This document shows positions 3,565 through 64,000 of a DNA stretch of 64,000 nucleotides, piece after piece; positions within the stretch are counted from its first letter, which is position 1, and the number at the start of each line of letters is the position of its first letter. Below the pieces are notes generated by a model. It worked only from the letters and a program-made list of their open reading frames with translations, ran no database searches and was not told the DNA's origin. The stretch is taken from positions 27,032,001-27,096,000 of the forward strand of contig NC_082722.1 in the NCBI RefSeq assembly GCF_030144855.1, given 5' to 3'. This stretch comes from Hypanus sabinus. Lineage: Eukaryota. Position numbers and translations under genes: made by a program.

Positions 3565-6500
3565 CTTAAAGAAACCGAATCGACCAATTCCTGCAATGCA
3601 AGTGGTATTTCAAAAGCAATTGCTGGAGGAAAAGGTTTTGTCAAGAAATGTATTAATCATGTAAACATGACGTAAAAATGACGCCACCGCAGTCAGAATA
3701 ATGTGGTACAGATTTAAAGTTTGTCTGGGCTAGGAGGGAGATAAGAACGCTTACAATTCCAATTTTTACATGGCCTACCTAGTACTTTCGTGACTATGCT
3801 GGAAATTTAGCGCTCTTGCCGACTTCAGAAATTATCCAGATTTTCATTGAGAAGAATTCAAATGTGTACTCTGCGCATTTTGATGGTAAAGAGGAAATCT
3901 GCTTAGGAGTTGAAAAATGTCCAATAAGGTAGGCAGACAATAAGTTATAGCAACATTTCTTCAGTCCAATTTACCTTTGCAGTTTTGCTCCATTTTATTC
4001 CTATTCCTTCGGTCAAATGGCATCCTACAGGTTTCTCCGGTAAAGCAGTTGCGCTCATCCGTGCAAAAGGCTTTAATCGCGACGATAGGGACGGTGTTCC
4101 ATAAATGAAAATTTTGGTCCTCTTGATAATTTCCTTTAGGGTTTGGTTATAAAAGTTCAACTAATGAACTGCTGTTGAACTACTGTTTAATGTTTGGATT
4201 GTAATATTAAAAGGAAATACATGAAGGAGCCTGGTTTGAACAGCAAAGACATTCGCTGTTACGTCGTCATGCACACGTCTCCGGTACAATGTATAATTTT
4301 AGATTCTGGGCATTGCTGACGAAAAACAACGACATATGTTTGCGAATTCGGCCTATTACTTCAGCAATTTAAATGCAATTTCAATGCTAAAGTTTCATGA
4401 AACAAAGTCATATAATGTGAAATCTTCATAAATATATTCCAGTCCCAGATTTCAGTACGTTTACTCAAAGTAGGTCGCATAGTACACAGGTTCCTTACTC
4501 GCTGCTGTGACCATCCTGTTCATAGAACCCAGCGAAAAGCAGTAAGAAAATCTGTCTGTGATAGAAAAAGATTCCGAGTATAGGATGTTGATCACATAAA
4601 TAGAGAGCTTAGAGTTTAAACAGCAAGTTATTCAGTTTAATGATGGCGGAGATTCAAGAGGTACTGTGATAAAATAAAAAAAAGGCGCGTCGAGGAATGA
4701 TTGATTGCTGTTTCGAGGTTCCCTTTTAACTCCTATAAACACGAGCAGTTGAGTTGGGGGAAATGCTGCTATTTCAAATATCTTCTATTTTTCCACAAGG
4801 TAAACGGGAGATAATAGGATAGACCATCGAGCAAAACATTTTAAACCGATACAGAAAAAAAGGGTTAACACGTACCCATGTGTCTAACCTGGCAGGGCAT
4901 AAATTGTTATCCATTTATAAAATGACAACACTAAAAATTTAAGAGCATCTTGGTTGGCAATGTAACAATGCTGAACTTCCATTCGCTTACTATGAATGGA
5001 GTTAAGTTTCTGATTACCTTGTCAAGCACCACGCCATTTTGAGGAGTTACCTTTTCCGAATTTCCACCAAGCTGTGGGGATGTTATGCCTTTTTCATAGA
5101 TTCTTTGTCAATATTATTACATTGTATCTCCTGTCCTCTCAGATCTGAAAGTATGTAGCTGCACTCATTTTGTCTATTGGATCCCACGCGATGTAATTGA
5201 GGTCTGTTTGTTGAGGAGTTTAGCCGGGAAAGGATATGGACATTGTGAACATTATCATGCAGTGGAACAGGATGAATCTTGAGAGACAATTCTAATTAGA
5301 ATCAGCTTAGTTTTACTTTGCAGGTAATTTGAGATGCCGAATATAAAAATGTGTCCGCGGCAGAATACACTATTTCCAATAGTACGTTTTCTGTCTTCTA
5401 GCTTGATCAGATATTCTTTCTGGACACATAAATACCAAAGATGAGAGTACTGTGATTAGTTTCCCATGAACAACTGTCTGTTCTCCATTAGTCCATTCTT
5501 CATGGTGTCTAAAAATAGAACAGTAACTTGGACACATTACTAAGCACTTAAAAACAAATTGGCTGATAAAAAGTGGCTTCGTTTGAGCACGTTTGGGATA
5601 GTCATGGTAGCACTTAGGTGCCAATTAAATAATACTGCAGATACGTTTTCTTTTTTAAATGCTTCACAGATAAACCCTACATTTCCATGTTTTCTCCAGA
5701 ATAAATTTGTTCAGCGTTAACTGGGGCGGAAAAGCACAGGAAAGTAGAATATATTTTGATGATTTTTTTATGTATTCTGTTTATTTGTTTTTTTTGATTT
5801 GAAGTGCTTGAATACACGACAATCTCTGAAATATTAAGATGTTTTTAAATGTCAAGCTCAGCTCTGGTTAGGCCAAAGGGTTGACTGTAAATCTAGATTT
5901 CTACTTTGTGGGACAATTGTGTCCACCGGACGAAATAATCCTTTATATTATCGCGCCTTAAAATGCCTCTGCCTTCATTACAAACATATTCCGAAATGAT
6001 TTCAACAAGTTTCTTTTTCGATAAATGTTTCTGCTGAATGATGATTAATCTTTAATGAATAACGGAGAGCTGAATTGAAAATAGTTGACCGTAAAATTAA
6101 AGCTGCAGTTAGATACTAATGTGTGGAAGTCATAGGAAACAATCAGAAAGCCACTCAGCGTCTGCTGAGGCAAATAATTTGAACACTTCAAGTTGACAAT
6201 TTTTCACTAGGTCATGAAGGGAAGTGATTTGTATGTTCCTCTTTTCATAGAAGGTTCCCGATGATTTCCTGCTAATTTTGGATTGAGAACATTTGCAATC
6301 CTGTTCTCCATTAATTACCCTGCCTTCCAATAAATAATCGAACTTGATCTGAGCCGAATACAAAGCGACATGACCTTAGTTCTCCTTTCATTCAAAAGTA
6401 ACCAGGAGTACTTTAGATCAAGAGGCAACTTTCGACATTGTCACTTCATGTAATATTGTCTACCTGCTCATTGTTCCCTTAACACTGTTTTGAATATAAC

Positions 6501-7945
6501 AATGGACCAGTACAGCACAGGAGTAGTACCTTCGACTAAGCTGTTCGTTCCGAACCCGATGTCAAATTAAACAAAATATCTACTCGTTGCCGTTCCTCAT
6601 TTAATTAATCAGAAAGTAGAATGTTTTCCCTCTGAAATCGGGTACAATGTCTTTTAATCTGCCAAGTAATTGGATCTCCATTTAAATCTCTCAGAGAATG
6701 ACTAACACAGAAATATCAAGCATTTAGCTATTTTTGAGAATCCTTTCCTATATGTATTTCCAGATTGAACACAGCACAGAAACCGGAAGTATAGACGTTG
6801 CAGCACAACTTGAGAAACCTTTAGCTGACAGAAGTAAAATATCTTAAATTACACTTCTTGTACTACCCTTGAACTTCAAGTGTGATAACAATAGCTCTCT
6901 GCTACAAGCAGGTTTCCGAGAAAAGCAATAATTGACCACGGATTTTCCGTGATGTCACCAGCAGACACTCGAGTGCAATTGTATCCTCAGGCAGCGTATT
7001 AGTTCCCATGAACACGAGGTACAAATGCATTCTTTCTAAACTGACAGATGATTTAAAATTCTACTCCGAACATCGTTTTCATCGAAAATTTGCAGAATCT
7101 CGCATGCAAATATTGACATTTCTGAATAATAAACAGGAAGTGAAAATAAATCTATTTTGAGAGGATATGAAACTTAGTCAGTATTGAACAAAAGCCGATT
7201 GCCTTTCAAATAGGCAGATAAAATAGGAAAATAAACACAAGAATGTACTGACTACTTTCAAAGCTTATTGAATTACTTGAATTCATAATTCACGAATGTA
7301 GAGTTAGCAGTCCGAAAAAACAATTCTGAGAAAGGAAATTAAACTGAAGTGTTCATTCTGTTGTTCTGCCTGCACGGTCTAACCCTATCTGCTGGATATT
7401 CCATGAATTCAATATTCAATAGCCAGAATGTTGGACCATTAGTCTTTCTGTTAACTATTATAGTAAGTCATTTTATGTCCCTTGAATATGCAATTTTATT
7501 CCGTTTCTTATACTACCATAATCCGTACAGGTCCTGATCCCCACAGGTGTAAATGATCCGCGACATGAGAATGCCATTTGAAAAAACATTCAACTGCTGA
7601 GACAGCTGACCTGAAAGGTGGGTTGGGGAGGTCAAGCTACGTACAGATTCTGGAGGGTGATAAGCCGAAAGGCAAAAGCTTCCAGTTCTGCAATCTAATA
7701 CATAAAGGAAGATAATGGCGACAGTTAGATGAAAGGTAAAGGGCATAATGATCCAGGGCCATATGGGGAACGGGGAAGGCATTGTGTGAAATATCTCAGT
7801 CGTGGATGGATGGAACCAAAGGGTGGTAAAGTTTTGCTTCTTCAGATGTGGATAAGATAGACTGCTTGAAACTGAATAGAAGGATAATTTCACCTTATCT
7901 TTATAAGGTAGATAATTGGAGAAACGAGGCATAAACTTTTATTGC

Positions 7946-10039: not shown

Positions 10040-11599
10040 GATTATAGAGCGTTTAATTTTATAATGGTAATGTCGCCTGGCAATAATGCAAATAAGCTAA
10101 AATATCTTGCGTAGTTTTCTGTTTGTATTCAGTGCCTGAAGCTTCTTGCATAAGTGTCCAAAAATATTCTGCCAGCATTGATGGATTCCAGCAGCCTTCA
10201 TACCATTTTTTATGACCACAATCTTCTTGTGAATACTTTCACCATGCTTGTTACGAACAGCACCAAAATTTGCATGGAAGAAGTGTAAATGGCAATGCAG
10301 AAAATGATATTTTACTGACATGCTCTACGTCATGGTTTTGTATGCTTGAAGTATATTGCCAAGCAACTGCACTTAGTTTGTTGCTCTGTAGTTGCCAATA
10401 TTTTTCCAACAACATCCTCGAATGCCTTACATGGGATTTTCTCCGGGCCCAATAGACGTTCTTCGAATGGGCTGCCATTGACAACTTGTTTGATATGCGG
10501 ACCAGCAGAAAATGACTTCTTTAATTTTGGAATTAATTATTCTGGGAATCTTCTCTCTCAAATATCGAAAATATACAGGGAAATTCTTGTACCTGGAGAC
10601 AACGGATTTCATCCTTGCAGTTTTGAACCCCGTAAATTTGCTTTTGCCTTTAACAAGCCCAAGGCTCTGACAAGGTCAGTTTACTCAGATTGAATATCAC
10701 AAGAGGCTCTCTCGACATTAGGAGTTCAAAATCTGTATCGATATCAGTGTCGTTTTTCCATTCCTGCCTCTTACACTTTGTCAACTTCCTCTGCCTCTTC
10801 CAGACTCTGTGTCTCAGGTGGCTTCAGTACTGCAAGACTATCATCTTGCGGCATAGGTCTCGATGCTGAACAGATATTGCAGTGTTCAATCGATTTCTTG
10901 TTTTTATTTACAGAGAAACCAACACACTGCTCAGATAGAACTAGCTCACGCCATATCATCGGTACCACGAATGCTACTGTCTTCCGAATATCTCTGAGCG
11001 AAACTCTCAAATTGATAACGCCTGGTGAGCAACAAATATGAAGAACCCAGGCACTGAGCTGGTCGCCAATCTTACACACAAAGTATAATTCATAGACCTT
11101 CTCAGTAAGAAGAATCATGCTCTGCGGTTGTGATTTAAGCTTATATTCACCACAAGTATAACAGAAAGCATCGCAGTTGATGCAACATTGGCCATACATC
11201 TTGCTTTCACAAATAATGCTGAAAATATAACAATTTGATTATAATGAATATGCTCAAAATGATATGACCATCGAGTATGCGCAGAACATGATCACTGACC
11301 TATTTACACTTAAACGCAACGCGGGGAACGGAGTTTGCGTGATGCTTTTATAATCTTTCCAAATCCTGTCCAGCCATGCAGCACCCGCCCTGTCTCATGC
11401 CCCAAAAAGAAGAAACCTTTTCAGTTTACATCGTGGGCAACCATTTAATTGACTTGCATTATGTATTGAAATATCAATATAGGCGATTTAAAAATGGTAC
11501 GTGATAGAGAAATTTCATGATGAATTTCATGATTAGTAACACATAATCCATGAGGCAAATCGAGCAGTATTCGGGATGCAAATTCTTTATTGTCCAGTG
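10040..11599 (-). mobile_element. Chapaev3-like (CMC superfamily) DNA transposon, internally deleted
   Basis: CACTG terminus at 11599. N-terminal Cys-rich ORF (CINCDAFCYTCGEYKLK…KIGDQLSAWVLHICC…PMIWRE) and C-terminal MSVKYHFLHCHLHFF…GAVRNKHGE, typical of this transposase family as I recall it. The family name is from recognition, not a database search. Confidence 0.7.
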
Positions 11600-12559
11600 A
11601 ACCTGGAGGGGAGGTGACGAACACATGTGCCTTGGAGCTGAGGGGCAAGAGACGATGGAACGAGTAGAGACTCGGTAAACTAGGGATTAGCTACACTGGC
11701 GAACTTGGTATCTTGGTTTGTGGATTATGAAAGCTGAATATGAACCCACAGACATGCTATGTTAATCCTTGTTGCAGAGGACTTGGTATGTGACAAGAAA
11801 GCCGTGCTGCAGCAAAGCAGAATGACGCGGTTTAGACAAAGTTAAGAACCATTTTGATCTTTTTCAATGGCATGATTTTCTTGGAGGAACTACAGTGACG
11901 CTTCTCTAAATTGAGTCAAGTAGCATCTATGGAGAGAAATGAACAGTCGAAGTTTCGTGTCCTGACTCTTCATCAGAACTGGTAGGAACAAAGAAGCAGA
12001 GAGATAGACATTATTAAAAGGTGAGGAATAAGTTGGAGCAAGATTTTGAGAGTAATAAGTGGATCCAGGTGAGGAAGTGATTAGCATCAGCCTTTTAAAT
12101 CACTTCCCTCTGCATACTCACAAACTAAATTTATTAGACCAAATTCCTCGCTGACGTTCATGGCTGATCCAATAAAAAATACTCTGATTCTGCTTTCCTT
12201 TTCAAGTACAACTTACATCGCTATAAATCAGCTTTACTTTGTCGCTATTCGGTTGCTTTCTAAAATTCTCCAGCAAACTACTGATATGATTTACCCAATG
12301 TAATCTAAAAGGCTAGAACAATGAAGAAATTCAGACTTGAAATCTCGTTCTGGCAGCGTGCGAGATTGCGTTCAACTAATGAATTGACGAATCGTATGAA
12401 TAATTGTGGCCACGACTCAGGTACAGCACTGTCGAATATTAGGAAAGATCTAGCAGATCATAGCTGCCATCCATGATTTAACGTGAGAAAGCTATATTCC
12501 CTCTAATTCGCGTTTAGCCTAACCGAGAATTTTATCTGCTTGAGTGATAATAGTTTTTT

Positions 12560-13445
12560 TTTTATTATTGGCCTAGCAAGTCGTTCAGTGCTTAAACAGG
12601 ACTCCGACGAAATATAAGAATCGAACAGACCAATGGATTTTCGATCCATAGGATGAACCGAACTAGTGATTCGGAAAAGGTAAAAGGTGGAGGTATCTGG
12701 TTAATGATAAACTGTGCTTCTGCAATGTGGCAGTTTTCTCCTGATCTTGTTCGTCCGAATTTGAACACCTCAGGATCAAACGCTGGCTTCCTATTTACCA
12801 AGAGAGTGCTCATTCATGATCTTTACCGCAGTTTGCATACCACCAAACACCATACCATCGCCAAACAGGTAACAGTCCATCTCGTGGAATCCACTAAAGC
12901 TTGTTTGAAGAAATCTCTGCCCAATTACCCGACCATATGACCTGTAGCACCTGAGGACCTGACACACTAGACCACTGCTACTGTATAAAAAGTAAGAAAT
13001 GCCTACACTTCCAAGCCCAAAAGCTACATCAATTTACTTGGCTGTCGTTCTCCTGCTTGTATAGAGGCAAAAGCAAACGAGCAAGAATCCAGAAATTAGG
13101 ACAACAAAAATGTCGTCGCTGGAGGCGGAGGTACGGCTACAAGATTACTTCAAGTCGATGGATTGGACTATGTTAAAGGTCTCGTCTACGATACTGAATT
13201 AATACACTGCGGTTATCACGGACGTGAAAAAAAACATAGTTGTAGTCAAGTGAGTCCAAGTGGCCTTGAGGAACAATGGCATCTGCAGCTTGCTGAGGTC
13301 AGATCTTAGGCAATGAAGATTGGCGACCAATAAAGTTATAAAAGGACCATAAAGGCCTATCACGGGCGAAGTGACAATTTCAGAATAAACCTGAAAGAAT
13401 GAAGGATGCCCAACAGTTGAGGCTGGGCTTGGATGCTATCAAAGT
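12560..13445 (+). mobile_element. Rex1/Babar LINE endonuclease region (decayed)
   Basis: Motifs MNRTSDSEKVKGGGIWLMIN, KKSLPNY…CSTxGPDTLDHCY and RLQDYFKSMDWT. Confidence 0.75.
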
Positions 13446-13451
13446 GCAATC

Positions 13452-14690
13452 AAACCAAAAAATCTGCAGATATTTGAAATCCGAAGCCACACTCACAATA
13501 TATTGGAGAAACTCAGCAGGCCAGGCAGCATTTATGGAACAGAATAATCAGTCGTCGTCTCGGACCCAGATCCATCATCAGAACTGGAAGGAAGCGGAAG
13601 AAGTCAGAATAAGAGGGAGGGGAGGAACCTCGGTTCAGATCCTTCGTAAATACATCCGTGACTCATCACCGGCTCTCGATTTCCAGTATGAATATAGGCA
13701 CGTTGGCCTAGTTCGTTTCATTTTCACTATGAATGTCCAGTCCCTGTGCACTTCTATCCACCTTCAGCACGGTCTTAACGCTTTTCATTTCTTCTTGGAC
13801 AGCAGACCTAATCAGTTGCACTGTCGTCGGTCTGTAAGATCTGGAATTCATTTTCAACAATTTCTCGTTGGGTCTTCTGACTTCCTTCAAACCCAAAGTG
13901 CAGCTATAGGCAACCACATGAGTCCTCGCAATGCCTGATCTTTCGTTGGCCATGTGGAACAGACAATGTCCCAACTTTACACCACCATCGCTCCCCAACA
14001 CTTCCAACTTAGTCTTCCAAACAGTACAAGTGGCACACTTGCCCATATACCTCCTCACTTACGAACACTCAGGGCCCCAAACAGTGAGGCGACACCGCAA
14101 CTGGGATTCCATTAGGACTACCTACTGTATCCAGAGCTCAAGGCGTGGCATCCTGTTTTTCGGTGAGACGCGACTTCGACCTGGAGAACGCTTCGTCGAG
14201 CATCTTCTCTCTGTCTACCACGAAAAGTTATGTCCACTCATTTCAATTCTAGTTCCCATTCCCTTTCCGACATGTCAGCCCATGGCTTCCTCTACTGCCA
14301 TGATCAGCCCACAGTCAGGTTGGAAGACCAACGCCTTATATTCCTTCTGGATTGTCTCCAACCTGATGGGATCAACTTCCGGTAATTACTCCAGATTTCC
14401 CACCCCCATCACTTCCCATTCTAGTTTCTGTCTCTCACTTTACCTGCTCAACACCTCCCTCTGGTGATTGTCCTCCTTCCCTTTTTTCCATCCTCTCCTG
14501 TCAGGTTCCCACTTCTCCAACCCTTAAGTTCTTACAACAATCAACACCCTGGCTATTCACCTCTTCACCTCCCTGTCTCCGGGTCCCACCCATCATCTGC
14601 CCTTTGAATGTCGACTATTTACTCGTTTTCATTGATGCTGCCTTTCCTGCTAAGCTCCTTCAGCATTTTGTGTGTGATGCTTTGAAATCA
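13452..14690 (+). mobile_element. Penelope-like element (RT C-terminus, GIY-YIG endonuclease, pLTRs), inserted in Rex1/Babar
   Basis: FIFTMNVQSLCTSI and AIGNHMSPR (RT); SIRTTYCIQSSRRGILFFGETRLRPGERFVEHL (GIY-YIG); pLTR motifs at both ends. Confidence 0.85.
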
Positions 14691-16130
14691 AGCGACATTG
14701 GTAACAAAAATGCTTCGCGACCAGATGAGCTAAACGTCTTCTATGCTTGCCGTGATCGGAGAAACAGAAAAGAACGATCACGAACTCCCAAAGATCCAGA
14801 TGATTCTGTGAATTCAGTCTCTGAGACGACATGACAGTAGCCTTTAGGACAGTGAACCCCCGGAAGGCATCCGGCCCAGATGAGATACTTGCCGGGAACT
14901 AAATTAATGTGCTGATCAATCTAAGGTGCTCCTTGTCTTTAAGCAGGCTGTGATTATACCGGTGCTTAAAAAGAAAGTGGTTACCTGCTCTCTTCCTGTA
15001 GCACTTCGATCCAGATTGAGAAAATGTTTTGAGAGCTTGGTGATGTAACATATACACTGCAGCATAATACACGACTGAGATCCATCTACTTTGCCTACCG
15101 TTAGGACAGATCTACAGCAGGTGTTATTTCACTAGCTCGTCAATCACCATGGAATATCTGGATACATCAGAATGATTTAATCGACTCATCTTGAAATGCA
15201 ATACTACCATCTCCTGAAACCTAATCAATAAGCATGAAGACATTATCTTCAATATCCCCTTGAGCAATTTATTCTGCGATTTCCTCACTTGAAAAACCCA
15301 GTGATTACATAGTGGCAACAACATCTCCTCCACAATTCCATCAGTACAGGTGCCTTACAAGGCTTTGTGATCACCATCCTGCTCTGATCGATTTACACCT
15401 ATGAATGTGTGGTTATGTGCAGCAACAATGAATATATAAGATTCCTGAGGACGCTGCTGTCGTGGAACGAATCAAAGTTGGAGTCCAATTAGTATGTAGG
15501 AGGGAGACTGAAAATCTGATTGCGTGGTGCCACAGAAAGAAGAAAATAAAAGCTCTTATTCAATATCAGCAAGAGGAACGCGCTGATGATTGATTTCAGG
15601 AGGAAGAAACCGTATATCCATCAGCCAGTCCTCATCGGAGGTTCAGAGCTAGAAAGCGTTAGCCACTTTTAGTTACTCAATGTTATAATTTCAGAGGACC
15701 TCTCCTGGTTACGATGAGAACAGGGCAGCGCATCTGCTTCGTTCGGAGTTTGTGACGAAATGGCTTTGCCTAACTGCTGGAGATGTGCAGTGGAGATTAG
15801 ATTGAAACACCTATGCCCTAGACCAGAAATACCTTCAAAATGTAGTGGATAGGGCTCGGCCCAGCACAGATAAAGTTCTCCTCACCATTGAGCACATCTA
15901 CATGCAGAAGGATCACAAGCAGCAGCACCCATCATCACGGATACCACCAGCCAGTTCATGCTTTCTTCTTGACGCTGCCGACAGGAAAAAACAACAGGAG
16001 TCTCTGGACTTATACCATCAAGTTCAGGATAAGTTATCACCCCTCAACAATCAGGGCCCTGAACTAGAGGGATTAACTGCACAGATTTTCACATGCCCTA
16101 ATACGGATCTGTTCCCTCAACCCATGTACT
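14690..16130 (+). mobile_element. Rex1/Babar LINE RT and 3' region (decayed)
   Basis: Continuation of the element at 12560: ASRPDELNVFYA, later RT-like segments and 3' motifs. Confidence 0.7.
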
Positions 16131-16182
16131 CATTTTCAAGGACTCTTCGTTTCATGTTTTCCATTGTTACACCTTATATTGG

Positions 16183-16246
16183 TGTTGTTGTTGTTGTTGT
16201 TGTTATTATTATTATTATTACTACTACTATTACTACTACTACTACT
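16183..16246. repeat. Compound (GTT)n(ATT)n(ACT)n microsatellite
   Basis: Directly visible; abuts the 3' end of the Dong/R4-like element. Confidence 0.95.
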
Positions 16247-16249
16247 TTT

Positions 16250-17060: not shown

Positions 17061-17229
17061 TGAAATATTCTACAATTATAATCTTGAATTTGTTGGTTTT
17101 TAAAGTTTTTTTACTAACTGCTGCTGATTAACCACCTGGTCCTGCATGTTATATGAATATGAATGATGAATACTGCACGGCTTTGACACATGGATGTTCG
17201 GATGCACGTTTCGAAGAAGGGTACTATGA

Positions 17230-33015: not shown

Positions 33016-33019
33016 AAAC

Positions 33020-48950: not shown

Positions 48951-48959
48951 TTTATTGAC

Positions 48960-49861: not shown

Positions 49862-50129
49862 CGATTTATTTATTTATTAAATATCGTACTGCCCTGCACT
49901 GCTTTGCGTAGGGCTCTAGACTGATTCTTGTGTTGTTTTACGTAGTCTAGTGTAGCCTTGAGTTATCTCACATAGTCTAGTGTAGTTTTCCTTTGTTTTG
50001 TGTAGCACTATGGTTCTGGAGGAAGTTGGTTCTTTTTTATCGTGCACCCTACTAGCATTTTATGGCCGAAATGACAATAAAAAGCGACTTGACTTGTATT
50101 GACTGGAAGATGAAGGTAAAGGGGCTTTT

Positions 50130-50947: not shown

Positions 50948-50959
50948 CTCGCTGGTGTC

Positions 50960-52385: not shown

Positions 52386-52619
52386 CAGATTGATCAGCAC
52401 AGTACTTTAGTTCTCGGCAGGTATCCCAGCTGGGCCGAATGCTTTCCATGGACTTACCGTCCTAAAGAGAGCTGTCAAATCGTTCAGAGAAATCACAGAA
52501 TCATCGGGGTCTGTGGCAGTTCGTGCTGTTTCCTTTATTTATTTTTTTTTTACTTTCGGCAAGCATAGAAAACATTTAGCTCATCTGGCCGCGAAGCATA
52601 TTTGTTACTTATGGCGCTT

Positions 52620-55180
52620 GATTTCAAAGCAACACACACAAAACGCTGGAGGAGCTCAGCAAGGCAGGTGCATCTATGAAAAAGAGTAAATAGTCAACGT
52701 TCAAGGTGGCAGATGATAGGTGGAAAACGGAGGCATGGAAGGGGAGAAGTGAAGAGTTGGGATTTTGATTGTAGAAAGAACTGAAGGGGTAGAGAAGGGG
52801 GAACCTGATAAGAGAGGACTGACGAAAGTGAAGGAGGAGTATCACCAGACTCAGGCGATGGGCCGGTGAAGTGATTGACGGAAACTAGAATGGGAAGTGA
52901 TGAGGGCGAGGGTGGAGGAATTAACGGAAGTTGATCCCATTAGTTTGGAGTCGACCCAGAGGGAATTTAAGGCCTTGCGCTTCCAACCTGAGTTTGGCAT
53001 GATTGTGGCAGTAGAGGAGAATGGGAAGTAGATTTGATATGAATGGCCACCGAGAAATTTCTCTTTTTTATGCTGGATGCGGAGGCAGTGGGGTGGAACA
53101 TGAGGTCAAGAGGAATCTCATTCTTGTGTGGCTGTGGAGGGATGGCGCGAAATGGAGGAGATGCGGGTGACGGCAGTGTTGATGGTGGAAGAACGGAAGT
53201 CTCTTTCCTTGAGGAAGGAGAACATCTCAGTAGTTCTAGAATGGAAAATCCTGTCATTACAGCAGATGCGGTGGAGATGAAGAATCGAAGAAAAAAGAAT
53301 GGCATTATTACAAATGATAGTGCAGGAAGAGGGATAGTCCAGATATATCAGTAGCTAGACTGACTGCAGCGATGGAGACAGAGATATCGAGAAAGGGGAG
53401 TCAAATTTCAGAAATGGAGTAAGTAATTTTGAGGGCAGGATGGACGTTGGAAGCAAAGTTGATGAAATTGAAAAGCTTAGTATGTGTGCAGGAAGCTGCA
53501 TCAAAACAGTTGTCAAAGTAGTGTTTCAAGAGTTGGGTAGAGATGCCGGTATAACCTTGGGATATTGGCTGTTCCACGTGGCCAACGAAATATCAGTCAT
53601 AGTTAGGACACAGGCGAGTGCTCACCGCTGCACCATGCGTTTGAAGGAAGTGAGAGGAGCCCAACGAGAAATAGTTGAAGCTGAGGACCAGGTCCGTCAG
53701 ACAGACGACAGTGGAACTGGCTTGTTTTGTTGTCCAGGAATAATTGGAGAGCGTCAAGACCATCCAAATGGTGAATAGAAGTGTACAGAGACTGGACATT
53801 CACAGTGAAAATAAAACGATCGATCATGGTACAGTGCGTGAAATACGCATTCCAATTCACGGTCCGGTCCAGTTATTATTCCAGGTTTTCTGGGTTTCCC
53901 CAGTTTCTGTTGAGGCAGCTCATTCATGTTTGGGCTGGCCTTATAAATAGCTTCAGGATTCAGCCTCTGGCTGCTGGATTGTCCCTGTCCAACACCCTAT
54001 CTAACACCCTGTCTGTATACCTTCCCTTTTGTCTTCCTGCCTGGTGGCTTGCCTTGCCTTGCCTCGCCTCGCCTCTGCCTAGAGGCTTGTCTTGGTTTGC
54101 CTCTGCCTGGATCCTTGCCTCGCCTCGCCTTGCCTCTGCCTGGAGCCTCCCCAAGTTTGAACTGTCTGTCTGTGTCCACGCCTTCGCTAGGTAGGTCCGG
54201 CCGTTTTGCCGCTACCTAGCGTTGGGAGCTGTCTCGTCGTGTTCAGCGTTATTTGTTAAGAGTCCCGTCCCTACGTCCTGTATCCAAGGAGGGGTCCCGG
54301 CTCTGTGTACTGTGTGATGAGTCCCGCCCCTACGTCCTGTACCAAAGGAGGGGTCCCGGCTCTGTGTTCTACGTTCCGGCCTCTTCCTCGACCTAGTCAA
54401 GTCTTTAGGGTCTCGTCCAGTCCTAGTCATGTCCCAGGTCCTTACTGTCCAAGCCACGGTTTTGTGCTCTTTTCTTGTCATGTGCCTTGCGCAGCCCAGG
54501 AGTACCTTGCCCAGCCCGGTGCTGGGGTTCCCTCGTTTTGTGCTGGTTTCCCTTGTCCTGTACCTGAATCTCATGTAAAGATTGTTGCCTCTCCTGGTCC
54601 TGTAGCCACGCCTTGTTCTCGCATAATTCTGGAGTCCGTGCCCGAGTCAATGCCTAGGTTCTGGGTCCTTTTCCGGTCTCTGGCTCGGAGACCAAGCCCA
54701 GACTTTTAGTTTCCTGTTCCATATCCTGGTGCCGATATCCTCGTCAAATCCTTGCACAGGCCCGGAATCCTTTGCTCGTCCAGGGCCTGTGTCGTGTCCA
54801 GCGTCCTCTCTTCTTCACTTCCCTTGCTTCCTTCTCACTCCTAGTCCTGTTCCTGGTAGTTCAGTGTCTGTGCCTTGTATTTGGGTCCACTCCCAACACC
54901 CCCGTTATGACACGATCTGGTCCAAGGGACATAAATTCATTGAAGAGATCGAGAGCGTGTGAAGCGTCAAGCATGTAAGTAAGCAGGGACTGAACCAAGA
55001 TTCCTTCCCTCCATTTTACTGTAAGTTCTTCCCTTTCCTGTCCAGTTCCCATGACAGATCTCGCCCCGAGCCGTGAAATGTTTATTATTTTGCATAAATG
55101 CTGCCTGGCATCCTGCGTTCCTCCAGCATATTGTGTGTGTTCCTTCGGATTTCCAGTATCTGAAGACTTTCTGGTTTGAT
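52620..55180 (-). mobile_element. Penelope-like element (paralog of 13452-14690), interrupted by a solo LTR
   Basis: Reverse complement of the left copy, including the same pLTR/RT internal junction. Confidence 0.82.
53822..54912 (+). mobile_element. Solo Gypsy-type LTR with 5-bp target-site duplication CGATC
   Basis: CGATC at 53817-53821 and 54913-54917; ends …CCCGTTATGACA; TTATAAATAG TATA-like box at 53941; internal short tandem repeats. Confidence 0.85.
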
Positions 55181-55940
55181 AGCGTTCATGCCCCGTCGCA
55201 ACTGTTGGGCTTCCTCCATTCATTCAAGTTTAATCCGAAATTGTCACTTCGCCCATGATATGCCTTTATGGACAATTTATATCATTATAGATCGCCTGTC
55301 TTGATTGCTTGTGATTTGACCTGAACAGACTGCAGATGCCGTGGTTCATCCCAGGGCTCCTGGATTCTCTTGTCTACAACTGTTTTTTTTTCACGCCTGT
55401 GATAACTGTAATGTATTCGTTCAGCATCACAGACAAGACTTTGAGCATAGACTCGAAGCAATCCCATGGCTGCTCATCTGCTTTCCGTGACCACCTCTTT
55501 GTTCTCCTAATCTCTGGATTCCTGCTCGTTTGCTTTTAGCTCTTTGCAGGCAGGAGACGGATGCTGAATTGATCAGATGTGGCTTTTGAGCTTGGAAGTG
55601 TAGGCATTCCTTTTCGTTTTATACAATAGTGGTGGTCTAATGTGCAGGCCTTCTGGTGCTACAGTTCATATGCTGAGAGTAATTGGGTAGAGTTTCCCTG
55701 ATAAAAAAACCCTATTGAAATCCCAGATAATGATCTGAAATGGGTAGGAATTAAGCTGTTTGGCGAAGGCAGCATACAGTATCTCTGTCGGAAGATGGTG
55801 GTATTTAAACTGCTCTCAGGATCATGAAGGAGAACTTCCTTGGTAAATAGAACGGCTGGCGTTTGATCGTTTGCTGCTCAAGTTCGGACAAGCAAGATGA
55901 CGACAAAGCTGCCACATCGGGGAAGCACAATTTATCATCA
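55180..55940 (-). mobile_element. Rex1/Babar endonuclease fragment (paralog of 12700-13445)
   Basis: Reverse complement aligns with 12705-13445. Confidence 0.8.
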
Positions 55941-58912
55941 TGGGACCCGTAGCGATAGGGCAGTGAAGAAAATGCATGGAGTAAAGCCAGATCTAACGTA
56001 TAGAGAGGCTTTGAGAAAAGAGCAGCATAATTAAGGCTATAAAGGTAGTAAGGTAGAAAGGGTAAAGTGTGTGTACTGCTATGAATGAAGCATCAGGAAC
56101 AAAAGTGATGAACTGAGAGCTTGGATACATACATGGTATTATGATGTAGTGGCCATTACGCAGACAAGGCTGGCACCAGGGCAGGAATGGATTCTCAATA
56201 TTCCTGGAATTCAGTGCTTTAAAAGGGATGAGGGGGTAAGGGAAGGAGGGGTGGCATTATTGTTCAGGGATACTATTACACCTACAGAAAGGATGGGTAA
56301 TGTAGCAGGATCCTCTTTTGAGCCCGTATGGGTGGAAGTCAGGAACAGGAATGGAGCCGTTACTCTACAGGGCGTATTTTATAGGCCCACTGGTAGAAGC
56401 AGAGATACCGAGGAACAGATTCGGAGGAAGATTTTGGAAAGGTGCAAAAATAACAGGGTTGTTACCATGGTTGACTTTAACTTCCCTAATATTGATTGGC
56501 ACTTGATTAGTTCCAAGGGTTTAGATGGGGCAGAATTTGTTAAGTGTGTCCAGGATGGATTCCTGTCACAGTATGTTGGCAGTCCGACCAGGGGGTATGC
56601 CATACTAGATCTAGTATTAGGTAATGAACCAGGTCAGGTCACAAATCTGTCAGTGGGTGAGCATCTGGGGGACAGTGATCACCGCTCCCTGACCATTAGA
56701 ATTATCATGGAAAAGGATAGAATCAGAGAGAACAGGAACATTTTTAATTGGGGAAGGGCAAATTATGAGTCTATAAGGCTAGAACTTGAGGGTGTGATTT
56801 GGGATGATGTTTTTACAGGGAAATGTACTATGGACGTGTGGTCGATGTTTAAGGATCTCTTGCAGGATATTAGGGATAAATTTGTCCCGGTGAGAGTGAT
56901 AAAGAATGGTAGGGTGAAGGAACCATGGGTGACAAGTGAAGTGGAAAATCTAGTCAGGTGGAAGAAGGCAGCATACATGAGGTATAGGAAGCAAGGATCA
57001 GATGGGTTTATTGAGGAATATAGGGTAGCAAGAACGGAGATTAAAAAGGGTGTGACAAGATCAAGAAGGGGTCACGAGAAGGCCTTGGCGAGAGGGTAAA
57101 GGAAAACCCAAGGCATTCTTCAATTATGTGAAGAACAAAAGGATGACAGGAGTATAGGATGGATTAGAGATAAAAGTGGGAAGATGTGCCTGGAGGCTGT
57201 GGAAGTGAGTGAGGTTCTCAATGAATACTTCTCTTCAGTATTCACCAATCAGAGGGAACTTGATGATGGTGAGGACAATATGAGTGAGGTTGATGTTCTG
57301 GAACATGTTGATATTAAGGGAGAGGAGGTGTTGGAGTTGTTAAAATACATTAGGACGGATAAGTCCTCGGGGCCTGACGGATTCTTCCCCAAGCTGTTTC
57401 ACCAGGTGAGGGAAGAGATTGCTGAGATTTTGGCTAGGATCTTTATGTCCTCCTTGTCCACAGGAATGGTACCGTTGGATTGGAGGGAGGCGAATGTTGT
57501 CCCCTTGTTCAAAAAGGGTAGTTGAGATAGTCCGGGTAATTATATATCAGTGAGACTTACGTCTGTGGTGGGAAAGCTGTTGGAATAGATTCTTAAACAT
57601 AGGATCTATGGGCATTTAGAGAATCATGGTCTGATCAGGGCCAGTCAGCATGGATTTGTGAAGGGCAGATCCTGCCTAACAAGCCTGATAGAGTTCTTTG
57701 AGGAGGTGACCAGGCATATAGATGAGGGTTGTGCAGTGGATGTGATCTACATGGATTTTAGTAAGGCATTTGACAAGGTTCTACACGGTAGGCTTAATCA
57801 GAAAGTCAGAAGGCATGGGATCCACGGATGTTTGGCCAGGTTGATTCAGAATTGGCTTGCCTGCAGAAGGCAGAGGGTTGTGGTGGAGGGAGTACATTCA
57901 GACTGGAGGGTTGTGACCAGTGATATCCCACAAGGATCTCTACTTTTCGTGATTTTTATTAACGACCTGGATGTGGGGGTAGAAGGGTGGGTTGGCAAGT
58001 TTGCAGACGACACAAAGATTGGTGGTGTTGTAGATCGTGTAAAGGATTGTCAAAGATTGCAGAGAGACATTGATAGAATGCAGAAGTGAGCTGAGCAGTG
58101 GTAGATGGATTTCAACCCGGAGAAGTGTGAGGTAGTACACTTTGGAAGGACAAACTCCAAGGCAGAGTACAAAGTAAATGGCAGCATACATGGTAGTATG
58201 GAGGAGCAGAGTGATCTGGGGGTACTTGTCCACGGATCCCGGAAAGTTGCCTCACAGGTAGATAGGGTAGTTAAGAAAGCTTATGGGGTGTTAGCTTTCA
58301 TAAGTCGAGTGATAATGTTCAAGAGACACGATGTAATGATGCAGCTCTCTGGAACTCTAGTTAGGCCACACTTTTATTGAGTCCAGTTCTGGAGTATTTA
58401 GTCCAGTTCTGTTTGCCTCACGGTAGGAAGGATGTGGAGGCATTGGAAAGGGTACAGAGGAGATTTACCAGGATGCTGCCTGGTTTTCAGAGTATGGATT
58501 ATCATCAGAGATTAAGGGAGCTAGGGCTTTACTCTTTGGAGTGAAGGAGGATGAGAGGAGACATGCCAGTGGTGTACAAGATATTAACAGGAGTAGACAG
58601 AGTGGACAGACAGAGCCTCTTCCCAGGGCACCACCGGTTAGTACAAGAGGACATGGCTTTAAGATAAGAGAGGGAAGTTCAGGGGGCATATTAGAGGAAG
58701 GTTTTTCACTCAGAGAGTGGTTGGTGCGTGGAATGCACTGCCTGAGTCAGTGGTGGAGGCAGACACACTAGTGAAGTTTAAGATACTAGTAGAAAAGTAT
58801 ATGGAGGAATTTAAGGTGGGGGGTTATATGTGAGGCAGGGTTTGAGGGTAAGCACAACATTGTGGGCTGAAGGGCCTGTAATGTGCTGTACTATTCTATG
58901 TTCTATGTTCTA
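55941..58912 (+). mobile_element. 5'-truncated CR1 (most of ORF2), inserted after the segmental duplication
   Basis: 316-aa ORF 56149-57099 (EN domain), RT motifs, TTCTATG tail; the flanks tttatcatc|…|aacagatacc are contiguous in the left paralog (~12697-12716). Confidence 0.92.
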
Positions 58913-59885
58913 AACAGATACCTCCACCTTTTCCGAACAACTAGTTCGGTCTGCCCTGTGTATCGAGAAGCCATCGGTCTGTTCGAATCTTATATTTCGT
59001 CGGAGTCTTGTTTAAGCACTGGCGGATCTGTTCCAGTGTTCAACACTACTTTACCTCAGGTGTGGATACCACTCGTTAGTTAAGCAGTTTAAAGCAACCT
59101 CGCAGGGTGCCAGAACGAGATTTGAAATATGATTTTCTTCATTGTTCTAGCCTTTTAGATTACATGGATTAAATCATATCAGTTGATTTCTGAAGAAATT
59201 TAGAAAGAAACCGAATAGTGATAAAGTAAAGCTGACCGATACTGATATGAGCTGCAGACAAAAAGGAAAGAAGATTCTCAGTTTCCGATTGGATCAGCCA
59301 TGATCGTGAGGAATATTAGTCTGATTGAACATCGAGTTTGTTTGTGAGAATGCAGGGAAGATGATAATGATTTAGGAGAGTGATGGTAATCACTTCCTCA
59401 GCTGGATCCACCTATTACTCTCCAACTCTTGCTCCACCTATTCCTGACATTTTAATACTGTCTATCTCTCCTCCTTCTTTACTTCCCTCCAGTTATAATG
59501 AAGAGTCTGGATACGAAACTTCAGCTTTTCACTTTTCTCCACAGATGCTGAGTGACCCAATTCAGAGAAACTTCACTGTACGACATCCAATGAAAACATA
59601 CCGTTTAAAAAGATCAAAATGGTTCCCAATTGTTGGTAAACGAGTCATTTTGCCTTGCTGCAGCACAGGTTTCTTTCTCATATACTAACTCCTCTGCATC
59701 AAAAGTTAACATTCTGTGGCCTGTCTCTAGGTTCATTTTAAGCTTTTATATTCCACAATCCAAGATCTTGGACAACAATTTCGCCAGTTGTAGGTAAACC
59801 CTCGCATACTCTGTCTCTCCCTGTCCCTCTCTTCTTCTGCCCCTCAGCTCCAAGGCATATGTGTTCACCACCTCCCCTCCGATTT

Positions 59886-60620
59886 CACTGGAGACGAATG
59901 AATTTACATCCTGAATACTTTTCGGTTTCTCTTATGGATTTTGTGCTGCTGATGATGAAATTCACCTTGAGGTTTTCCTATCAGGTACCATTTTTGTACC
60001 ATAATCGTCTATATTTATTATTTCAATTCATAATGCAATTCCACTAAAATGTTGTCCACGATGTAAGATGGAAAGTTTTCTTTTTCTCCAGGCATTAGGC
60101 AGGGCGGATGGCGCATGGCAGGGGAGGTTTCAGACAGATAGTAAAAGCACCGTGCACACTCCGTTCAATCCGTTGTGTTTAAGTTTACATCGGTCAGACA
60201 TCATGGTCATGCGCATGCTCTGCTGGTATATTGTGTATATTTATTTCAATCAAGTAAGTTTATTTTTCAGTAGTATTTGTGAAAGCCAAACCACTGTTGC
60301 ATCCATCACGATTTTTCTGTTATAATTGTGGCGAGTATAAGCTTAAACATCAACCACGGAGCGTGACTCGTCTTATTAAGAAAGCCTATAAGTTCTTCGA
60401 GTGTAAGATTAGTGACCAACTCAATGCCTGGGTTCTTCACATTTGTTGTTCAACAGGGGTTATCAATCTGAGAATGTGGCTCAGAGATATTCGGAAGGCA
60501 ATACCATTCGAGGTACCTATGACATGGCGAGAGCTAGTCCTGTCTTACCAATGTGTCTGATTTCTTTGTTACAAATAAGAGATCGATTGAATACTGCAAT
60601 CTCCTTTTACCATCGAGACC
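59886..60620 (+). mobile_element. Chapaev3-like transposon 5' part (paralog of 10040-11599)
   Basis: CACTGG terminus at 59886 with the same flank (cacctcccctcc) as the left copy; ORF FCYNCGEYKLK…KISDQLNAWVLHICC…PMTWRELVLS. Confidence 0.7.
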
Positions 60621-60952
60621 TGTGCCGTTGTTGCAAGTGAGTGACTAGGGACGAACCCACGTGCAAGACAAAGGAACGAGATGCGCTAGTACAGTTGTGA
60701 ACGTGGAACAGGTAACCAGGGGAATCTTGACTCGGAGACAAGTTTTATCAAGTAGATCCAGGTATTGGAGTGCAGCTCAGAACTAATAGACCCAATGGAT
60801 CCAGAAAAGAGGACACACATTAGAATCGACCAATGATCTAGCGACCCATGACTGTCCGCCAGATTTCTGTAATTCTCTAAGGGGAACCAGGTGCGCTGTA
60901 ATTAATTTAATTAGCAGCAAATAGATATCAGATGACGGGAATTAAGGCAGAA

Positions 60953-62050
60953 TGTCATAGCTGAGCATGGGGAGCAGACCAAAATGCAGGGCACAGACTC
61001 TGAACTGCCAGGAACAGGACTAGGCGGGAGAAGGAAGCAGGGGAAGTGAAGAAGAAGAAAGGACGCTGGACACGACACAGGCCCCGGACGAGACAAGGAC
61101 TCCGGGCTTAGGCTGGGACTCGACGAGGATGCGGAACCAGGACATGGGACTGGGAACTAGGAGCTTGGGCTTAAACTCCGAGCCAGAGACTGGACAAGGA
61201 CCCAGCACCTGGGTCTTAACTCGGGCTCGAATTCCAGAATCAGGCGAGGACAAGACGTGGTTACAGGACAAGGAGATGCACAGAACGGGACGAGAGACTC
61301 CAGGACGGGACAAATGAACCCCAGCACAGGACGAGGGAATCCCAGTACCGGGCTGGGCAATCTACTCCTGGGCTGGGCGAAGCGCATGTACAAGACGAGA
61401 ACACAGACTCTAGGTCGAGGGATGTACACCAGGACTGGAGGTGGGACAAGGGAACCCCAGCACTGGACGAGGGACCACCAGCAGCAGGCTGGGCAAGGTA
61501 GTCCTGGGCTGGAGAAGCACATGACAAGACGAGAACACAGACCCTAGGTCGAGGGATGTATACCAGGACTGGAGGTGGGACAAGGGAACCCCAACACTGG
61601 ACGAGGGACCCCCAGCAGCGGGCTGGGCAAGGTAGTCCTGGGCTGGGAGAAGCACATGACAAGACGAGAACACAAAGCCGTGACTTGGACAGGACAAGGA
61701 CCTTGATTGTGATTAGGACTGGACAAGACCCCGAAGCCTTGACTTGGTCGAGGAAAAGACAGGAACGCAGAGCCTTGATCGAGGAAGAACAGGAGCGCAG
61801 AACACAAAGCCTTTGTTCAGGGAGAGCAGGAAAGCAGAACTCTGGTTCGAGGAAGAGACAGGAACATGGAACACCGAGCCGGTACCCCTCCTTGGGTACA
61901 GGACGTAGGGCCGTGACTCCTTACACAGAACGCTGAACACGACCGGACAGTTCAACGCTAGTTTGCGGCAAAACGGCCGGACCTAGCGAAGGCATGGACA
62001 CAGACAGACAATACCAAACAGGGGGAGGCCCCTATCAGAGGCCTGGCAAG
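60953..62050 (-). mobile_element. Truncated LTR of the same family as 53822-54912, preceded by another LTR-like fragment (~60625-60952)
   Basis: Starts TGTCATAG…GACCAAAATGCAGGGCACAGAC, the reverse-complement orientation of the solo LTR. Confidence 0.75.
61317..61680. repeat. ~134-bp tandem repeat (about 2.7 copies) inside the LTR
   Basis: Units begin aacccc(a)gcac at ~61317, ~61452 and ~61586. Confidence 0.88.
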
Positions 62051-64000
62051 AGATAATCACCCTCCAGAATCTGTACGTAGCTTAACTTCCCCGACTGTCC
62101 TTCCACGTCAGATGCCTCAGCAGTTGAAGGCTGTTCAAAATTGAATAGTCATCTAGTGGATAATTTACAGCGGTGGAGATCAGGACCTTGACGGATTATG
62201 GTAGAATAAATAACGGAATAATATTCCATATTCAAGGAATGTAATGTGGCCTAATTGAATAGAGAACAAAAATCACTCATGACCCAGCTTGTTGGATCAT
62301 TGAATATACAATGCAGGGAATATTCGGCAGATCGGGTTAGCATGGACAGGCAGATCAATTGAATTAACACGTCAATTTACCTTCCTTTCTCAGAATTGTG
62401 TTTCTGGACTTCTGAACCCACAATCATAACTTATGAATTCAGGACCCTCCATTATCATCGAAATAAATAGGTACATTCTTGTGTTTTCTTTCCTATTTTA
62501 TCTGCCTATTTAAAAGGCCCATAGTTTTTGTTCAATTCCGACAAAGTATCACGTCGATTTAGATTAGATATATTTTCACTTCTTGTTTATAATTCTCCAA
62601 TGCGATCATTTGTATGCAAGACTCCGCAAGTTTCTGTAAAAAAACGTACGGAATAGAATTTTAATGCATTTTTCATTTTACCAAGAATGCCTTGTGTTTA
62701 TGAGAACTAACACGCTGCCTGAGAATAGAATGTCACTCGTGACTCTGCTGGTGGCATCATGGAAATGTGTGGTCAAAGTCTGCTCCTCTCTGAAACATGC
62801 ATGTAGCAGACAGCTTGTGGTAACACCTAAGAGTAGGTCAATGCGTTTAATTTAAGTAACTTATTTGACATCGAGCTTCTGTCAGCTAGATGTTTCTCAA
62901 GTTGTGCTGCAACGTTTATACATCCTGTTTCTGTGCTATGTTCATTCTGGAAATATATATAAGAAAAAAATTAACAAACAGCTAATAATTGATATTTATG
63001 CGTGAATCATTCTCTGAGAGCATTGAATGGAGTACAGATTAAACCGATTTCTGGGGAATGCATACTCTTTCCTAGTTAAATAAATGAGGGACCGCAGCTA
63101 GTAGATATTTAGTTCAATTTCATGTCGTCTTCGCAACAGACATCTTCGCCGAAAGTCATTTTCCTGTGCTGCACTGGTCCGTCGATATATTAAAAGCAGT
63201 GTTATTGGACCAAGGAACAGGTAGAAAATATTACATCAAGTAGCAATGTCGAGAGTCTACTCTTGAAATACTCTTTTCATGATACTTTTGAAAACGTAAA
63301 TGAATGGAGAAGTAAGGTCATCTCATTTTGTGTTCGGCTCATATCAAGTTACATCGTCAATTGGAAAGCAGGGTCATTATGGAAAACAGCTTTGCAGATG
63401 GTTGCAATCCACCGTTAAGCAGAAAACATCGAGAGCCTTCTATGGAAAGAGGAAAATACAGATCACTTCTCCTCATGACTCAATGATCAACCTGAAGTGT
63501 TCACACTATTTCTCACAGCTTTCGCTGCGTGGCTTGTTGAGTGTTTCCTATGACTTCCACGCAGTACTATCGAACGGTAGCTTTAATTTTGCAGTAACCT
63601 AACTCCAATTCATCTCCCTATTATATATTACAGAATAATCAACATTCAGTTGAAACATTTATCCTGAAAAAACCTTGTTGGAAACATTTCGGAATATCTT
63701 TGTAATGAAGGCAGAGCTATTTATCGGCGCTATTTTATAAAGGATTATATCGTCCGGTGGACAAAATTGTCTCACAAATTAGAAATCTAGATTTGCAGTC
63801 AATGATTTGGCCTAAACAGAGCTGTACTTGACATTTAACAACGTCTTGATTTTTCTGAGAATGTCATACATTCGAACAATTGAAAATGATAAAAACAATA
63901 GATCAAATACACAAAAAAGAACAAAATACCTCATACTTTACTGTGCTTTCCCGCCCCAGCTAATGCTGAACTAATATATGCTGGTGAAAATATAGAGATG

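What the first reader, a model, noticed from the sequence alone, without database searches (positions are those of the whole stretch)
5680..64000. Old inverted segmental duplication predicts a head-to-head paralog of the Ig gene just beyond the window
Seen: about 9 kb upstream of the Ig gene (5680-14920) is present as a diverged reverse complement at 52390-64000. It includes unique non-TE DNA and identical composite junctions (Rex/Penelope, Chapaev insertion site, a shared deletion in the Chapaev ORF giving WRELVLS). Homology is still running at base 64000, which matches ~5680. Inference: a sister gene on the plus strand, with leader near ~66,100 and V exon near ~66,340-66,650 in window coordinates if there are no large indels. 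The two genes would be divergently transcribed with ~37 kb between the duplicated arms. A local pair of V-domain genes each with a free G-strand Cys could encode a heterodimer (speculative).
Basis: partly seen in the sequence, partly recalled or inferred. Interest (0 to 1): 0.72.

Follow-up and report, generated by a model that had tools for sequence, protein, structure and literature searches.

The report
Old inverted duplication beside ray receptor gene
About 9 kb of DNA upstream of a stingray immune-receptor gene really is present a second time, inverted and about 23% diverged, at the right edge of the window; this is ordinary gene-family growth, and the twin gene predicted just beyond the window could not be checked.

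Summary
Window 5680-14922 and 52387-64000 are a colinear, inverted pair of seven blocks. Together they give 5,887 aligned bases at 77.1% identity (K2P 0.275). Divergence is uniform (0.24-0.29) across low-copy DNA, a Chapaev-like transposon relic and the inner 12.7-14.9 kb blocks. Homology is still at 77-83% identity when the window ends.

A LINE sits in the right arm exactly where the left arm is uninterrupted. This is therefore one old segmental duplication followed by arm-specific insertions, not independent transposon copies.

One caveat applies. The arms lie on different contigs, separated by two assembly gaps in the spacer. Orientation and the ~37 kb spacing therefore rest on scaffolding that I could not test.

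The gene is a SIRP-like V-C1 receptor of the ray/shark family. Its leader-V splice is confirmed by transcript contigs.

The predicted head-to-head sister (leader ~66,116, V ~66,341-66,646) could not be tested, because no tool gave DNA beyond base 64,000. Earlier notes of this scan record nothing in the first 21 kb to the right.

My odds are about 0.45 for a V exon or relic there and about 0.2 for an intact gene. The heterodimer idea is untested. The scan has already noted similar duplications elsewhere in this genome.

The parts
5680..14922 (.). Left arm of the inverted duplication. It is the upstream flank of the receptor gene. Its left limit is set only by the window end of the other arm.
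   Evidence: seven colinear blocks, 77.1% identity overall
52387..64000 (.). Right arm, the reverse complement of the left arm. It is cut off by the window end while homology is still running.
   Evidence: The inner end is sharp at 52387.
5680..7661 (.). Outermost block (matches 64000-62056). It is low-copy and non-coding. K2P is 0.268, and identity is 0.77-0.83 in the last 400 columns.
   Evidence: No ORF or Pfam signal. Almost no transcript contigs at >=80% likeness, whereas 7800-8400 reaches a depth of 10^4.
10767..12450 (-). Chapaev/N-RAG-like DNA-transposon relic (matches 60712-59025). Its ORF relic at 10774-11238 carries WRELVLS in both arms.
   Evidence: K2P 0.279. One search gives feature similarity of 0.92-0.93 to clusters carrying RAG1_imp_bd; this is a lead only.
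12586..14922 (.). Inner blocks (match 59021-58911, 55938-54907, 53819-53523 and 53018-52387). They evolve neutrally and end in a short RT-like motif at 14864-14890.
   Evidence: All six frames are equally conserved.
55939..58910 (+). LINE (AP endonuclease plus reverse transcriptase) present only in the right arm. It is inserted exactly at the point that is uninterrupted in the left arm (12703|12704).
   Evidence: PF03372, PF14529, PF00078; flank alignment
7662..10766 (.). Left-arm region largely without a counterpart. It holds a very high-copy repeat (7800-8400), an inverted-repeat pair (8484-8796 / 9238-9547) and 32-bp tandem arrays. Only 9238-9526 matches the right arm.
53820..54906 (.). Extra 1.1 kb in the right arm. 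It includes a further copy of the short repeat (54597-54913) and simple repeats.
61307..61674 (.). 134-bp tandem array (2.7 copies, 90% matches), present in the right arm only.
14923..52386 (.). Spacer of nominally 37.5 kb. It consists of LINE debris, including a CR1-like element with esterase ORF1, APE and RT at about 43.4-47.3 kb. It also holds the two assembly gaps (30888-31072, 49616-49861). No exon of the receptor family is present.
3510..3564 (-). Leader exon of the receptor gene (ATG at 3564-3562; last exon base at 3510).
   Evidence: The splice joint 3339|3510 is seen in transcript contigs with 0 mismatches.
3034..3339 (-). V(J) exon of 306 nt. It is a V-set domain with the J-like motif GSRCGTKLTVF and a third Cys.

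Best explanation
The two stretches are the arms of one old inverted segmental duplication of at least 9.2 kb. The duplicated DNA is the 5' flank of a SIRP-like V-C1 immune-receptor gene in a stingray receptor cluster.

The ancestral segment already held a Chapaev-like transposon relic and other old repeat fragments embedded in low-copy DNA. After the duplication both copies drifted neutrally to about 23% difference. Each copy then collected its own insertions: a LINE and a tandem array on the right, and a high-copy repeat and foldback on the left. The spacer filled with LINEs.

This is the normal birth-and-death growth of a multigene receptor family.

What is shown: the duplication, its colinearity, its uniform age and the later insertions. 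What is inferred: the unit originally carried a copy of the gene as well, so a sister gene or its remnant may lie 2-3 kb beyond the window on the plus strand. That step is untested.
For: - Seven blocks lie in the same order and inverted orientation.
- K2P is 0.24-0.29 in all five large blocks, whatever their content.
- The outermost 2 kb has no coding or TE signal and almost no matching transcript contigs. By contrast, 7800-8400 reaches a depth of 10^4.
- A 2,972-bp LINE with APE and RT lies in the right arm precisely at left-arm 12703|12704.
- The same ORF lesion (WRELVLS) is present in both arms.
- Homology ends abruptly at 14922/52387 and nothing else in the spacer is colinear.
- Only one leader and one V exon of the family are in the window.
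- The family is clustered and multi-copy in Hypanus, Hemitrygon and Mobula. Earlier notes report other segmental duplications of this family on the same chromosome.
Against: - The arms lie on different contigs, separated by two gaps, so the inverted orientation and the 37 kb spacing depend on scaffolding that I could not verify.
- I had no repeat library. 'Low-copy' therefore rests on the absence of contigs in four transcript assemblies and on the window itself.
- A large composite repeat family with more than two genomic copies cannot be excluded.
Confidence: 0.85

Rival explanations
1. The duplication runs on through the promoter, leader and V exon. An intact, divergently transcribed sister gene would then sit at about 66.1-66.7 kb and onward on the plus strand.
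For: - Identity is 0.77-0.83 in the last 400 columns before the window end, with no decay.
- Only 2.1 kb more homology is needed after at least 9.2 kb.
- Transcript contigs of the same organism include paralogues 83-87% identical to the V exon.
- Hypanus sabinus XP_059849439 (P0164) shares the motif DLDVL.GANATM with the window V. No other listed family member has it. Its leader-to-C1 gene span (5,253 bp) is close to that of the window gene.
- Each Mobula species has at least two Cys-bearing genes.
Against: - No DNA beyond base 64000 could be read.
- Earlier notes list nothing between +1 and +21.4 kb, although readers flagged such genes at many other places.
- The most abundant paralogous transcript is XP_059849440-like. 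It has about 10 or fewer silent differences in 304 nt, which is fewer than the arms' K of 0.275 predicts.
- The V-domain tree does not resolve any sister.
Confidence: 0.2
2. A sister copy was made but has decayed. A V-exon relic, pseudogene or truncated V-C1 gene lies to the right of the window.
For: - This is the same evidence as for the intact sister.
- The candidate XP_059849439 is annotated as V-C1 only, without a membrane anchor.
- Decay is a typical outcome for birth-and-death families.
Against: It is untested. The placement of XP_059849439 rests on accession order and gene spacing only.
Confidence: 0.25
3. Only flanking DNA was duplicated. The outer breakpoint falls between the equivalents of 3.6 and 5.7 kb, or the copy of the gene was later deleted, so there is no sister gene.
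For: - The inner end shows that this duplication has sharp, arbitrary breakpoints.
Against: There is no sign of decay at the edge. Duplications in receptor clusters usually carry genes.
Confidence: 0.35
4. The match is only independent insertions of the same transposon families, not a duplicated block.
For: Parts of the arms are TE-derived (Chapaev-like relic, RT-like motif, short repeats). A shared internal deletion could mark a non-autonomous subfamily.
Against: - The order and orientation of seven blocks are preserved.
- The junctions are shared.
- The outer 2 kb is low-copy.
- Divergence is uniform.
- One arm carries a precise LINE interruption.
Confidence: 0.03
5. The duplication is real but the arrangement is an assembly artefact. 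The right-hand contig would be flipped or misplaced, so the arms would in truth be direct repeats or further apart.
For: Two gaps (30888-31072, 49616-49861) separate the arms, and nothing in the window bridges them.
Against: At 77% identity this is not a haplotype duplicate. Short gaps with estimated sizes usually come from spanning data that also fix orientation (my inference).
Confidence: 0.1

Closest known systems
Birth-and-death expansion of immune-receptor clusters by segmental duplication, for example the inversely duplicated LILR blocks of the human leukocyte receptor complex and the SIRP cluster (from my own knowledge; the paper search found no source)
   Same: A multigene family of Ig-type paired receptors. 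Copies arise by duplication of gene plus flank, sometimes inverted. The copies then diverge and fill with transposons.
   Different: Only the flank copy is seen here. The gene copy is unverified. The family is the cartilaginous-fish V-C1 family, not LILR or KIR.
SIRP-like V(J)-C1 receptor family of rays, sharks and chimaeras. It is annotated as 'tyrosine-protein phosphatase non-receptor type substrate 1-like' or 'NCR3LG1-like', for example Mobula XP_072135415 and Hypanus XP_059849437/439/440.
   Same: The window V exon is 61-77% identical to these proteins. It has the same leader, exon length and J-like GxGTKLTVF motif.
   Different: The window gene's own product was not found in the protein collection. 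It carries a third Cys that only the Mobula members share. No describing paper was found.
CD79B (Ig-beta) G-strand cysteine
   Same: The Cys sits at the x position of the GxG J-like motif. In CD79B that position makes the interchain disulfide (from my own knowledge).
   Different: There is no close sequence relationship. PDB matches to CD79A are weak (E about 0.002), whereas the best relatives are the SIRP-like family.

Membership tests
Two-copy segmental duplication (inverted) | Several blocks in conserved order and orientation across different sequence classes | tested here: met
   Seven colinear blocks over 9.2 kb versus 11.6 kb
Two-copy segmental duplication (inverted) | The same divergence in all blocks (one event) | tested here: met
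   K2P is 0.24-0.29 in the five large blocks. Two short blocks deviate, at 0.14 and 0.40.
Two-copy segmental duplication (inverted) | Contains low-copy, non-TE DNA | tested here: inconclusive
   5680-7661 has no ORF or Pfam signal and almost no transcript contigs. No genome-wide copy count or repeat library was available.
Two-copy segmental duplication (inverted) | Arm-specific insertions at sites intact in the other arm | tested here: met
   A LINE at 55939-58910 lies at the point that is contiguous at 12703|12704.
Two-copy segmental duplication (inverted) | Relative orientation and distance of the arms supported by contiguous sequence | not testable with these tools
   The arms are on different contigs and two gaps lie between them.
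Gene duplication giving a head-to-head paralogue pair | A second copy of the leader and V exon colinear with the right arm | not testable with these tools
   No DNA beyond 64000 could be obtained: searches returned no DNA, one search listed no runs, and one search found no metagenome match.
Cartilaginous-fish SIRP-like V-C1 receptor family | Leader plus V-set domain with a J-like motif, closest to annotated family members | tested here: met
   Pfam V-set E = 4.6e-9. Identity to family proteins is 61-77%. The splice is confirmed.
Cartilaginous-fish SIRP-like V-C1 receptor family | C1 domain, membrane anchor and ITIM tail | not tested
   These exons lie left of the window. They are known only from earlier notes s1-146520 and s1-146580.
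CD79B | Sequence kinship and an ITAM tail | tested here: not met
   Only weak matches to CD79A chains (E about 0.002). The nearest relatives are SIRP-like proteins.
Independent transposon copies | Homology limited to single elements, with unrelated flanks | tested here: not met
   Homology runs through several different elements and through low-copy DNA.

The most novel reading that the evidence does not exclude
The right arm leads into an intact, divergently transcribed sister gene that also carries the G-strand cysteine. The two products would form a disulfide-linked V-C1 heterodimer. That would be an antigen-receptor-like or CD79-like covalent pair within a non-rearranging receptor family of cartilaginous fish.
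Probability: 0.04. Interest if true: 0.6.

Novelty: new member of a known kind. Interest (0 to 1): 0.25.

Why it matters
As it stands, this documents one more step in the birth-and-death growth of a large, still undescribed ray and shark receptor family. It also gives a dated marker (K about 0.28) for that step.

It would matter more if the sister gene exists and keeps the extra cysteine. The locus would then offer a testable case of paired, possibly covalently linked, V-C1 receptors resembling antigen-receptor chains. The available evidence makes that unlikely.

Tried and rejected
1. Reading beyond base 64000.
- Exact-protein look-ups of family members in Hypanus, Hemitrygon and Mobula gave either no record or 'no DNA, file too large'.
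- For the right edge, no DNA run was listed.
- An exact 36-mer from 63,9xx found nothing in metagenome contigs.

2. Laying contigs on 3001-9000 at 80% likeness, to look for a diverged second copy of 3.6-5.7 kb. The four runs, labelled 'DNA?', behave as transcript assemblies: only exons are covered and joints are spliced. The non-coding test was therefore impossible. The known second copy of 5680-7661 was not seen either.

3. Searching with the V exon alone among proteins of 64-203 aa found nothing.

4. A V-domain tree of 21 family members is unresolved around the window sequence. It gives no dating of the Cys lineage.

5. The continuity test across the two gaps, using other repeat copies, had no usable copy. 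The gaps were not filled.

6. The homodimer fold of the V domain gave no verdict: score 0.18, under the mark of 0.32, and controls were not run. It is neither for nor against binding.

7. Pfam found no family in the Chapaev-like ORF or in the 12.6-14.9 kb ORFs. The label 'Rex/Penelope' was not confirmed.

8. Paper searches for the family and for LILR inverted duplication gave no relevant source.
Full report
**1. The observation**

A self-comparison of the window, and a more sensitive arm-against-arm comparison, give one inverted, colinear chain:
- 5680-7661 with 64000-62056
- 9238-9526 with 61279-60971
- 10767-12450 with 60712-59025
- 12586-12703 with 59021-58911
- 12704-13721 with 55938-54907
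- 13713-14008 with 53819-53523
- 14288-14922 with 53018-52387

Global re-alignment of the blocks gives 5,887 aligned bases, 77.1% identity and K2P 0.275. The five large blocks lie at 0.268, 0.279, 0.293, 0.266 and 0.241. Two short blocks deviate: 0.40 over 287 bp and 0.14 over 111 bp.

The outermost alignment stops exactly at base 64000. Identity is 0.77 and 0.83 in its last two 200-column windows, so the homology is cut by the window, not by its own end. The inner end is sharp: after 14922/52387 the sequences are unrelated. A sensitive search of the whole spacer finds only LINE-to-LINE matches that are not colinear.

**2. The assembly gaps**

The N runs at 30888-31072 and 49616-49861 lie in the spacer. 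Neither arm contains a gap, so the arm-to-arm comparison is not affected.

The arms do, however, sit on different contigs (1-30887, and 49862 onward). I looked for repeat copies elsewhere in the window that would bridge either gap, and there are none. The inverted orientation and the nominal 37.5 kb spacing therefore rest on scaffolding that I could not check.

**3. Duplication or transposon copies?**

Several results point to a single duplicated block.

- The order and orientation of seven blocks are kept across different kinds of sequence.
- The outermost 2 kb (5680-7661) has no long ORF and no Pfam signal.
- Four transcript assemblies of the same organism were laid on 3001-9000 at 80% likeness. 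This 2 kb stretch attracted almost nothing, while 7800-8400 reached depths of 10^4. The stretch therefore behaves as low-copy DNA.
- Block 10767-12450 holds an ORF relic whose nearest feature-space neighbours are clusters carrying the RAG1 importin-binding domain.
- The string WRELVLS occurs in both arms, at 10939-10953 (-) and 60525-60539 (+).
- Region 12586-14922 is conserved equally in all six frames, which means it evolves neutrally. It ends in a short RT-like motif.
- A 2,972-bp LINE with AP-endonuclease and reverse-transcriptase domains lies at 55939-58910 in the right arm. That is exactly the point where the left arm reads straight through (12703|12704).
- Further arm-specific material is 7662-9237 and 9548-10766 on the left, and 53820-54906 plus a 134-bp tandem array at 61307-61674 on the right.

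Uniform divergence together with arm-specific insertions is what one old duplication predicts. Independent insertions would not give this pattern. I could not count genomic copies, so a composite repeat family with more than two members is not formally excluded.

**4. The gene**

The only family exons in the window are the leader (3564-3510, minus strand) and the V exon (3339-3034).

The V exon is a V-set domain (E = 4.6e-9). It has the two canonical cysteines, a J-like motif GSRCGTKLTVF and a third Cys.

An exhaustive profile search and two word-index searches place it in the ray and shark family that databases call SIRP-alpha-like or NCR3LG1-like. It is 61-77% identical to proteins of Mobula, Hemitrygon and Hypanus. 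Its own product is not in the collection.

The same G-strand Cys occurs in Mobula, in at least two genes per species:
- M. birostris: XP_072135222 and XP_072135415
- M. hypostoma: XP_062923615 and XP_062923461

. The Cys is therefore a conserved feature of a subfamily.

Transcript contigs with 0-1 mismatches cover the V exon and carry the joint 3339|3510. The gene is thus spliced as read and expressed at low depth.

By earlier notes s1-146520 and s1-146580, the C1, membrane and ITIM exons lie left of the window. I did not test that.

**5. The predicted sister gene**

The mirror arithmetic is correct. ATG 3564 maps to about 66,116, and V 3339-3034 maps to about 66,341-66,646. The arms differ in length by 2.4 kb, so displacement by kilobases is possible.

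I could not read any base beyond 64000. The attempts are listed under Tried and rejected.

Indirect evidence in favour:
- Homology does not decay at the edge.
- Only 2.1 kb more is needed after at least 9.2 kb.
- Close paralogues exist.

What the paralogues show:
- The most abundant paralogous transcript lies on the V exon with 44 mismatches in 304 nt and no gaps.
- The 25 differences listed imply 17 amino-acid changes. All 17 give the residue found in Hypanus sabinus XP_059849440.
- This also suggests that the window is from Hypanus sabinus or a very close relative.
- XP_059849439 shares DLDVL.GANATM with the window V. No other listed family member has that motif. It is annotated as V-C1 only, spans 5,253 bp, and has no annotated neighbour within 10 kb.
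- That would fit the slot between the window end and the next family gene at +21.4 kb. This rests on accession order and spacing only, so it is a lead.

Indirect evidence against:
- Earlier notes list nothing between +1 and +21.4 kb of the window end. Readers flagged family genes at many other places, including one on the minus strand at +21.4 to +28.2 kb.
- Neither Hypanus candidate has the G-strand Cys.
- Silent differences between the window V and the XP_059849440-like transcript are about 10 or fewer, which is fewer than K = 0.275 predicts. This is a rough count from incomplete data.
- The V-domain tree is unresolved.

My odds are about 0.45 that a V exon or relic lies within about 10 kb right of the window, about 0.2 that it is an intact gene, and about 0.04 that it is an intact, Cys-bearing partner.

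**6. The heterodimer idea**

The Cys sits at the x of the GxG J-like motif. From my own knowledge, CD79B's interchain cysteine holds that same position, so a covalent dimer is conceivable.

There is no partner sequence to test. A fold of two copies of the V domain gave no verdict, and it is reported only as tried.

**7. Age (inference)**

K2P 0.275 means about 0.14 substitutions per site per lineage. At 1-2.5 x 10^-9 per site per year that is roughly 55-140 million years. It would be more if elasmobranch rates are lower. I have no calibrated rate for this species, so I treat it only as 'old'.

**8. Verdict**

It is an ordinary event in a birth-and-death receptor cluster. The scan has noted similar inverted and direct segmental duplications elsewhere in this genome.

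The interesting part, a head-to-head Cys-bearing partner, is an untested extrapolation with modest odds.

Noticed in passing
window 3036-3339 and 3515-3564: A paralogous transcript, 85.5% identical to the V exon and 10-20 times deeper than the window gene's own transcript, matches Hypanus sabinus XP_059849440 at all 17 inferred residue changes. The four runs labelled 'DNA?' behave as RNA assemblies.
   Followed up: partly
window 7800-8400: A very high-copy repeat, with contig depth of 10^4 in all four transcript assemblies. It is present in the left arm only, and a related copy lies at 33013-33159.
   Followed up: no
window 8484-8796 and 9238-9547: An inverted-repeat pair (about 300 bp arms) flanks 32-bp tandem arrays. 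Related copies lie at 60971-61279 and 54597-54913. It looks like a foldback-type element.
   Followed up: no
window 43400-47350 (-): A nearly full-length CR1-like LINE with a GDSL-esterase ORF1, AP endonuclease and reverse transcriptase. Its frames are broken.
   Followed up: partly
window 297-1080 and 50159-50950: A direct repeat at 87.5% identity. It is the youngest repeat pair in the window and looks like a LINE 3' part. One copy lies just downstream of the V exon.
   Followed up: no
window 3600-3700 (-): Two ACGTCA (CRE-like) half sites lie within 100 bp upstream of the ATG. Transcript contigs stop before 3600, so the transcription start is close to the ATG.
   Followed up: no
Mobula proteins P0157/P0170 and P0171/P0158: Each Mobula species has at least two genes carrying the same extra G-strand Cys. 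In M. hypostoma their accession numbers fall in two separate groups of neighbouring family genes, which suggests a duplicated gene block.
   Followed up: no
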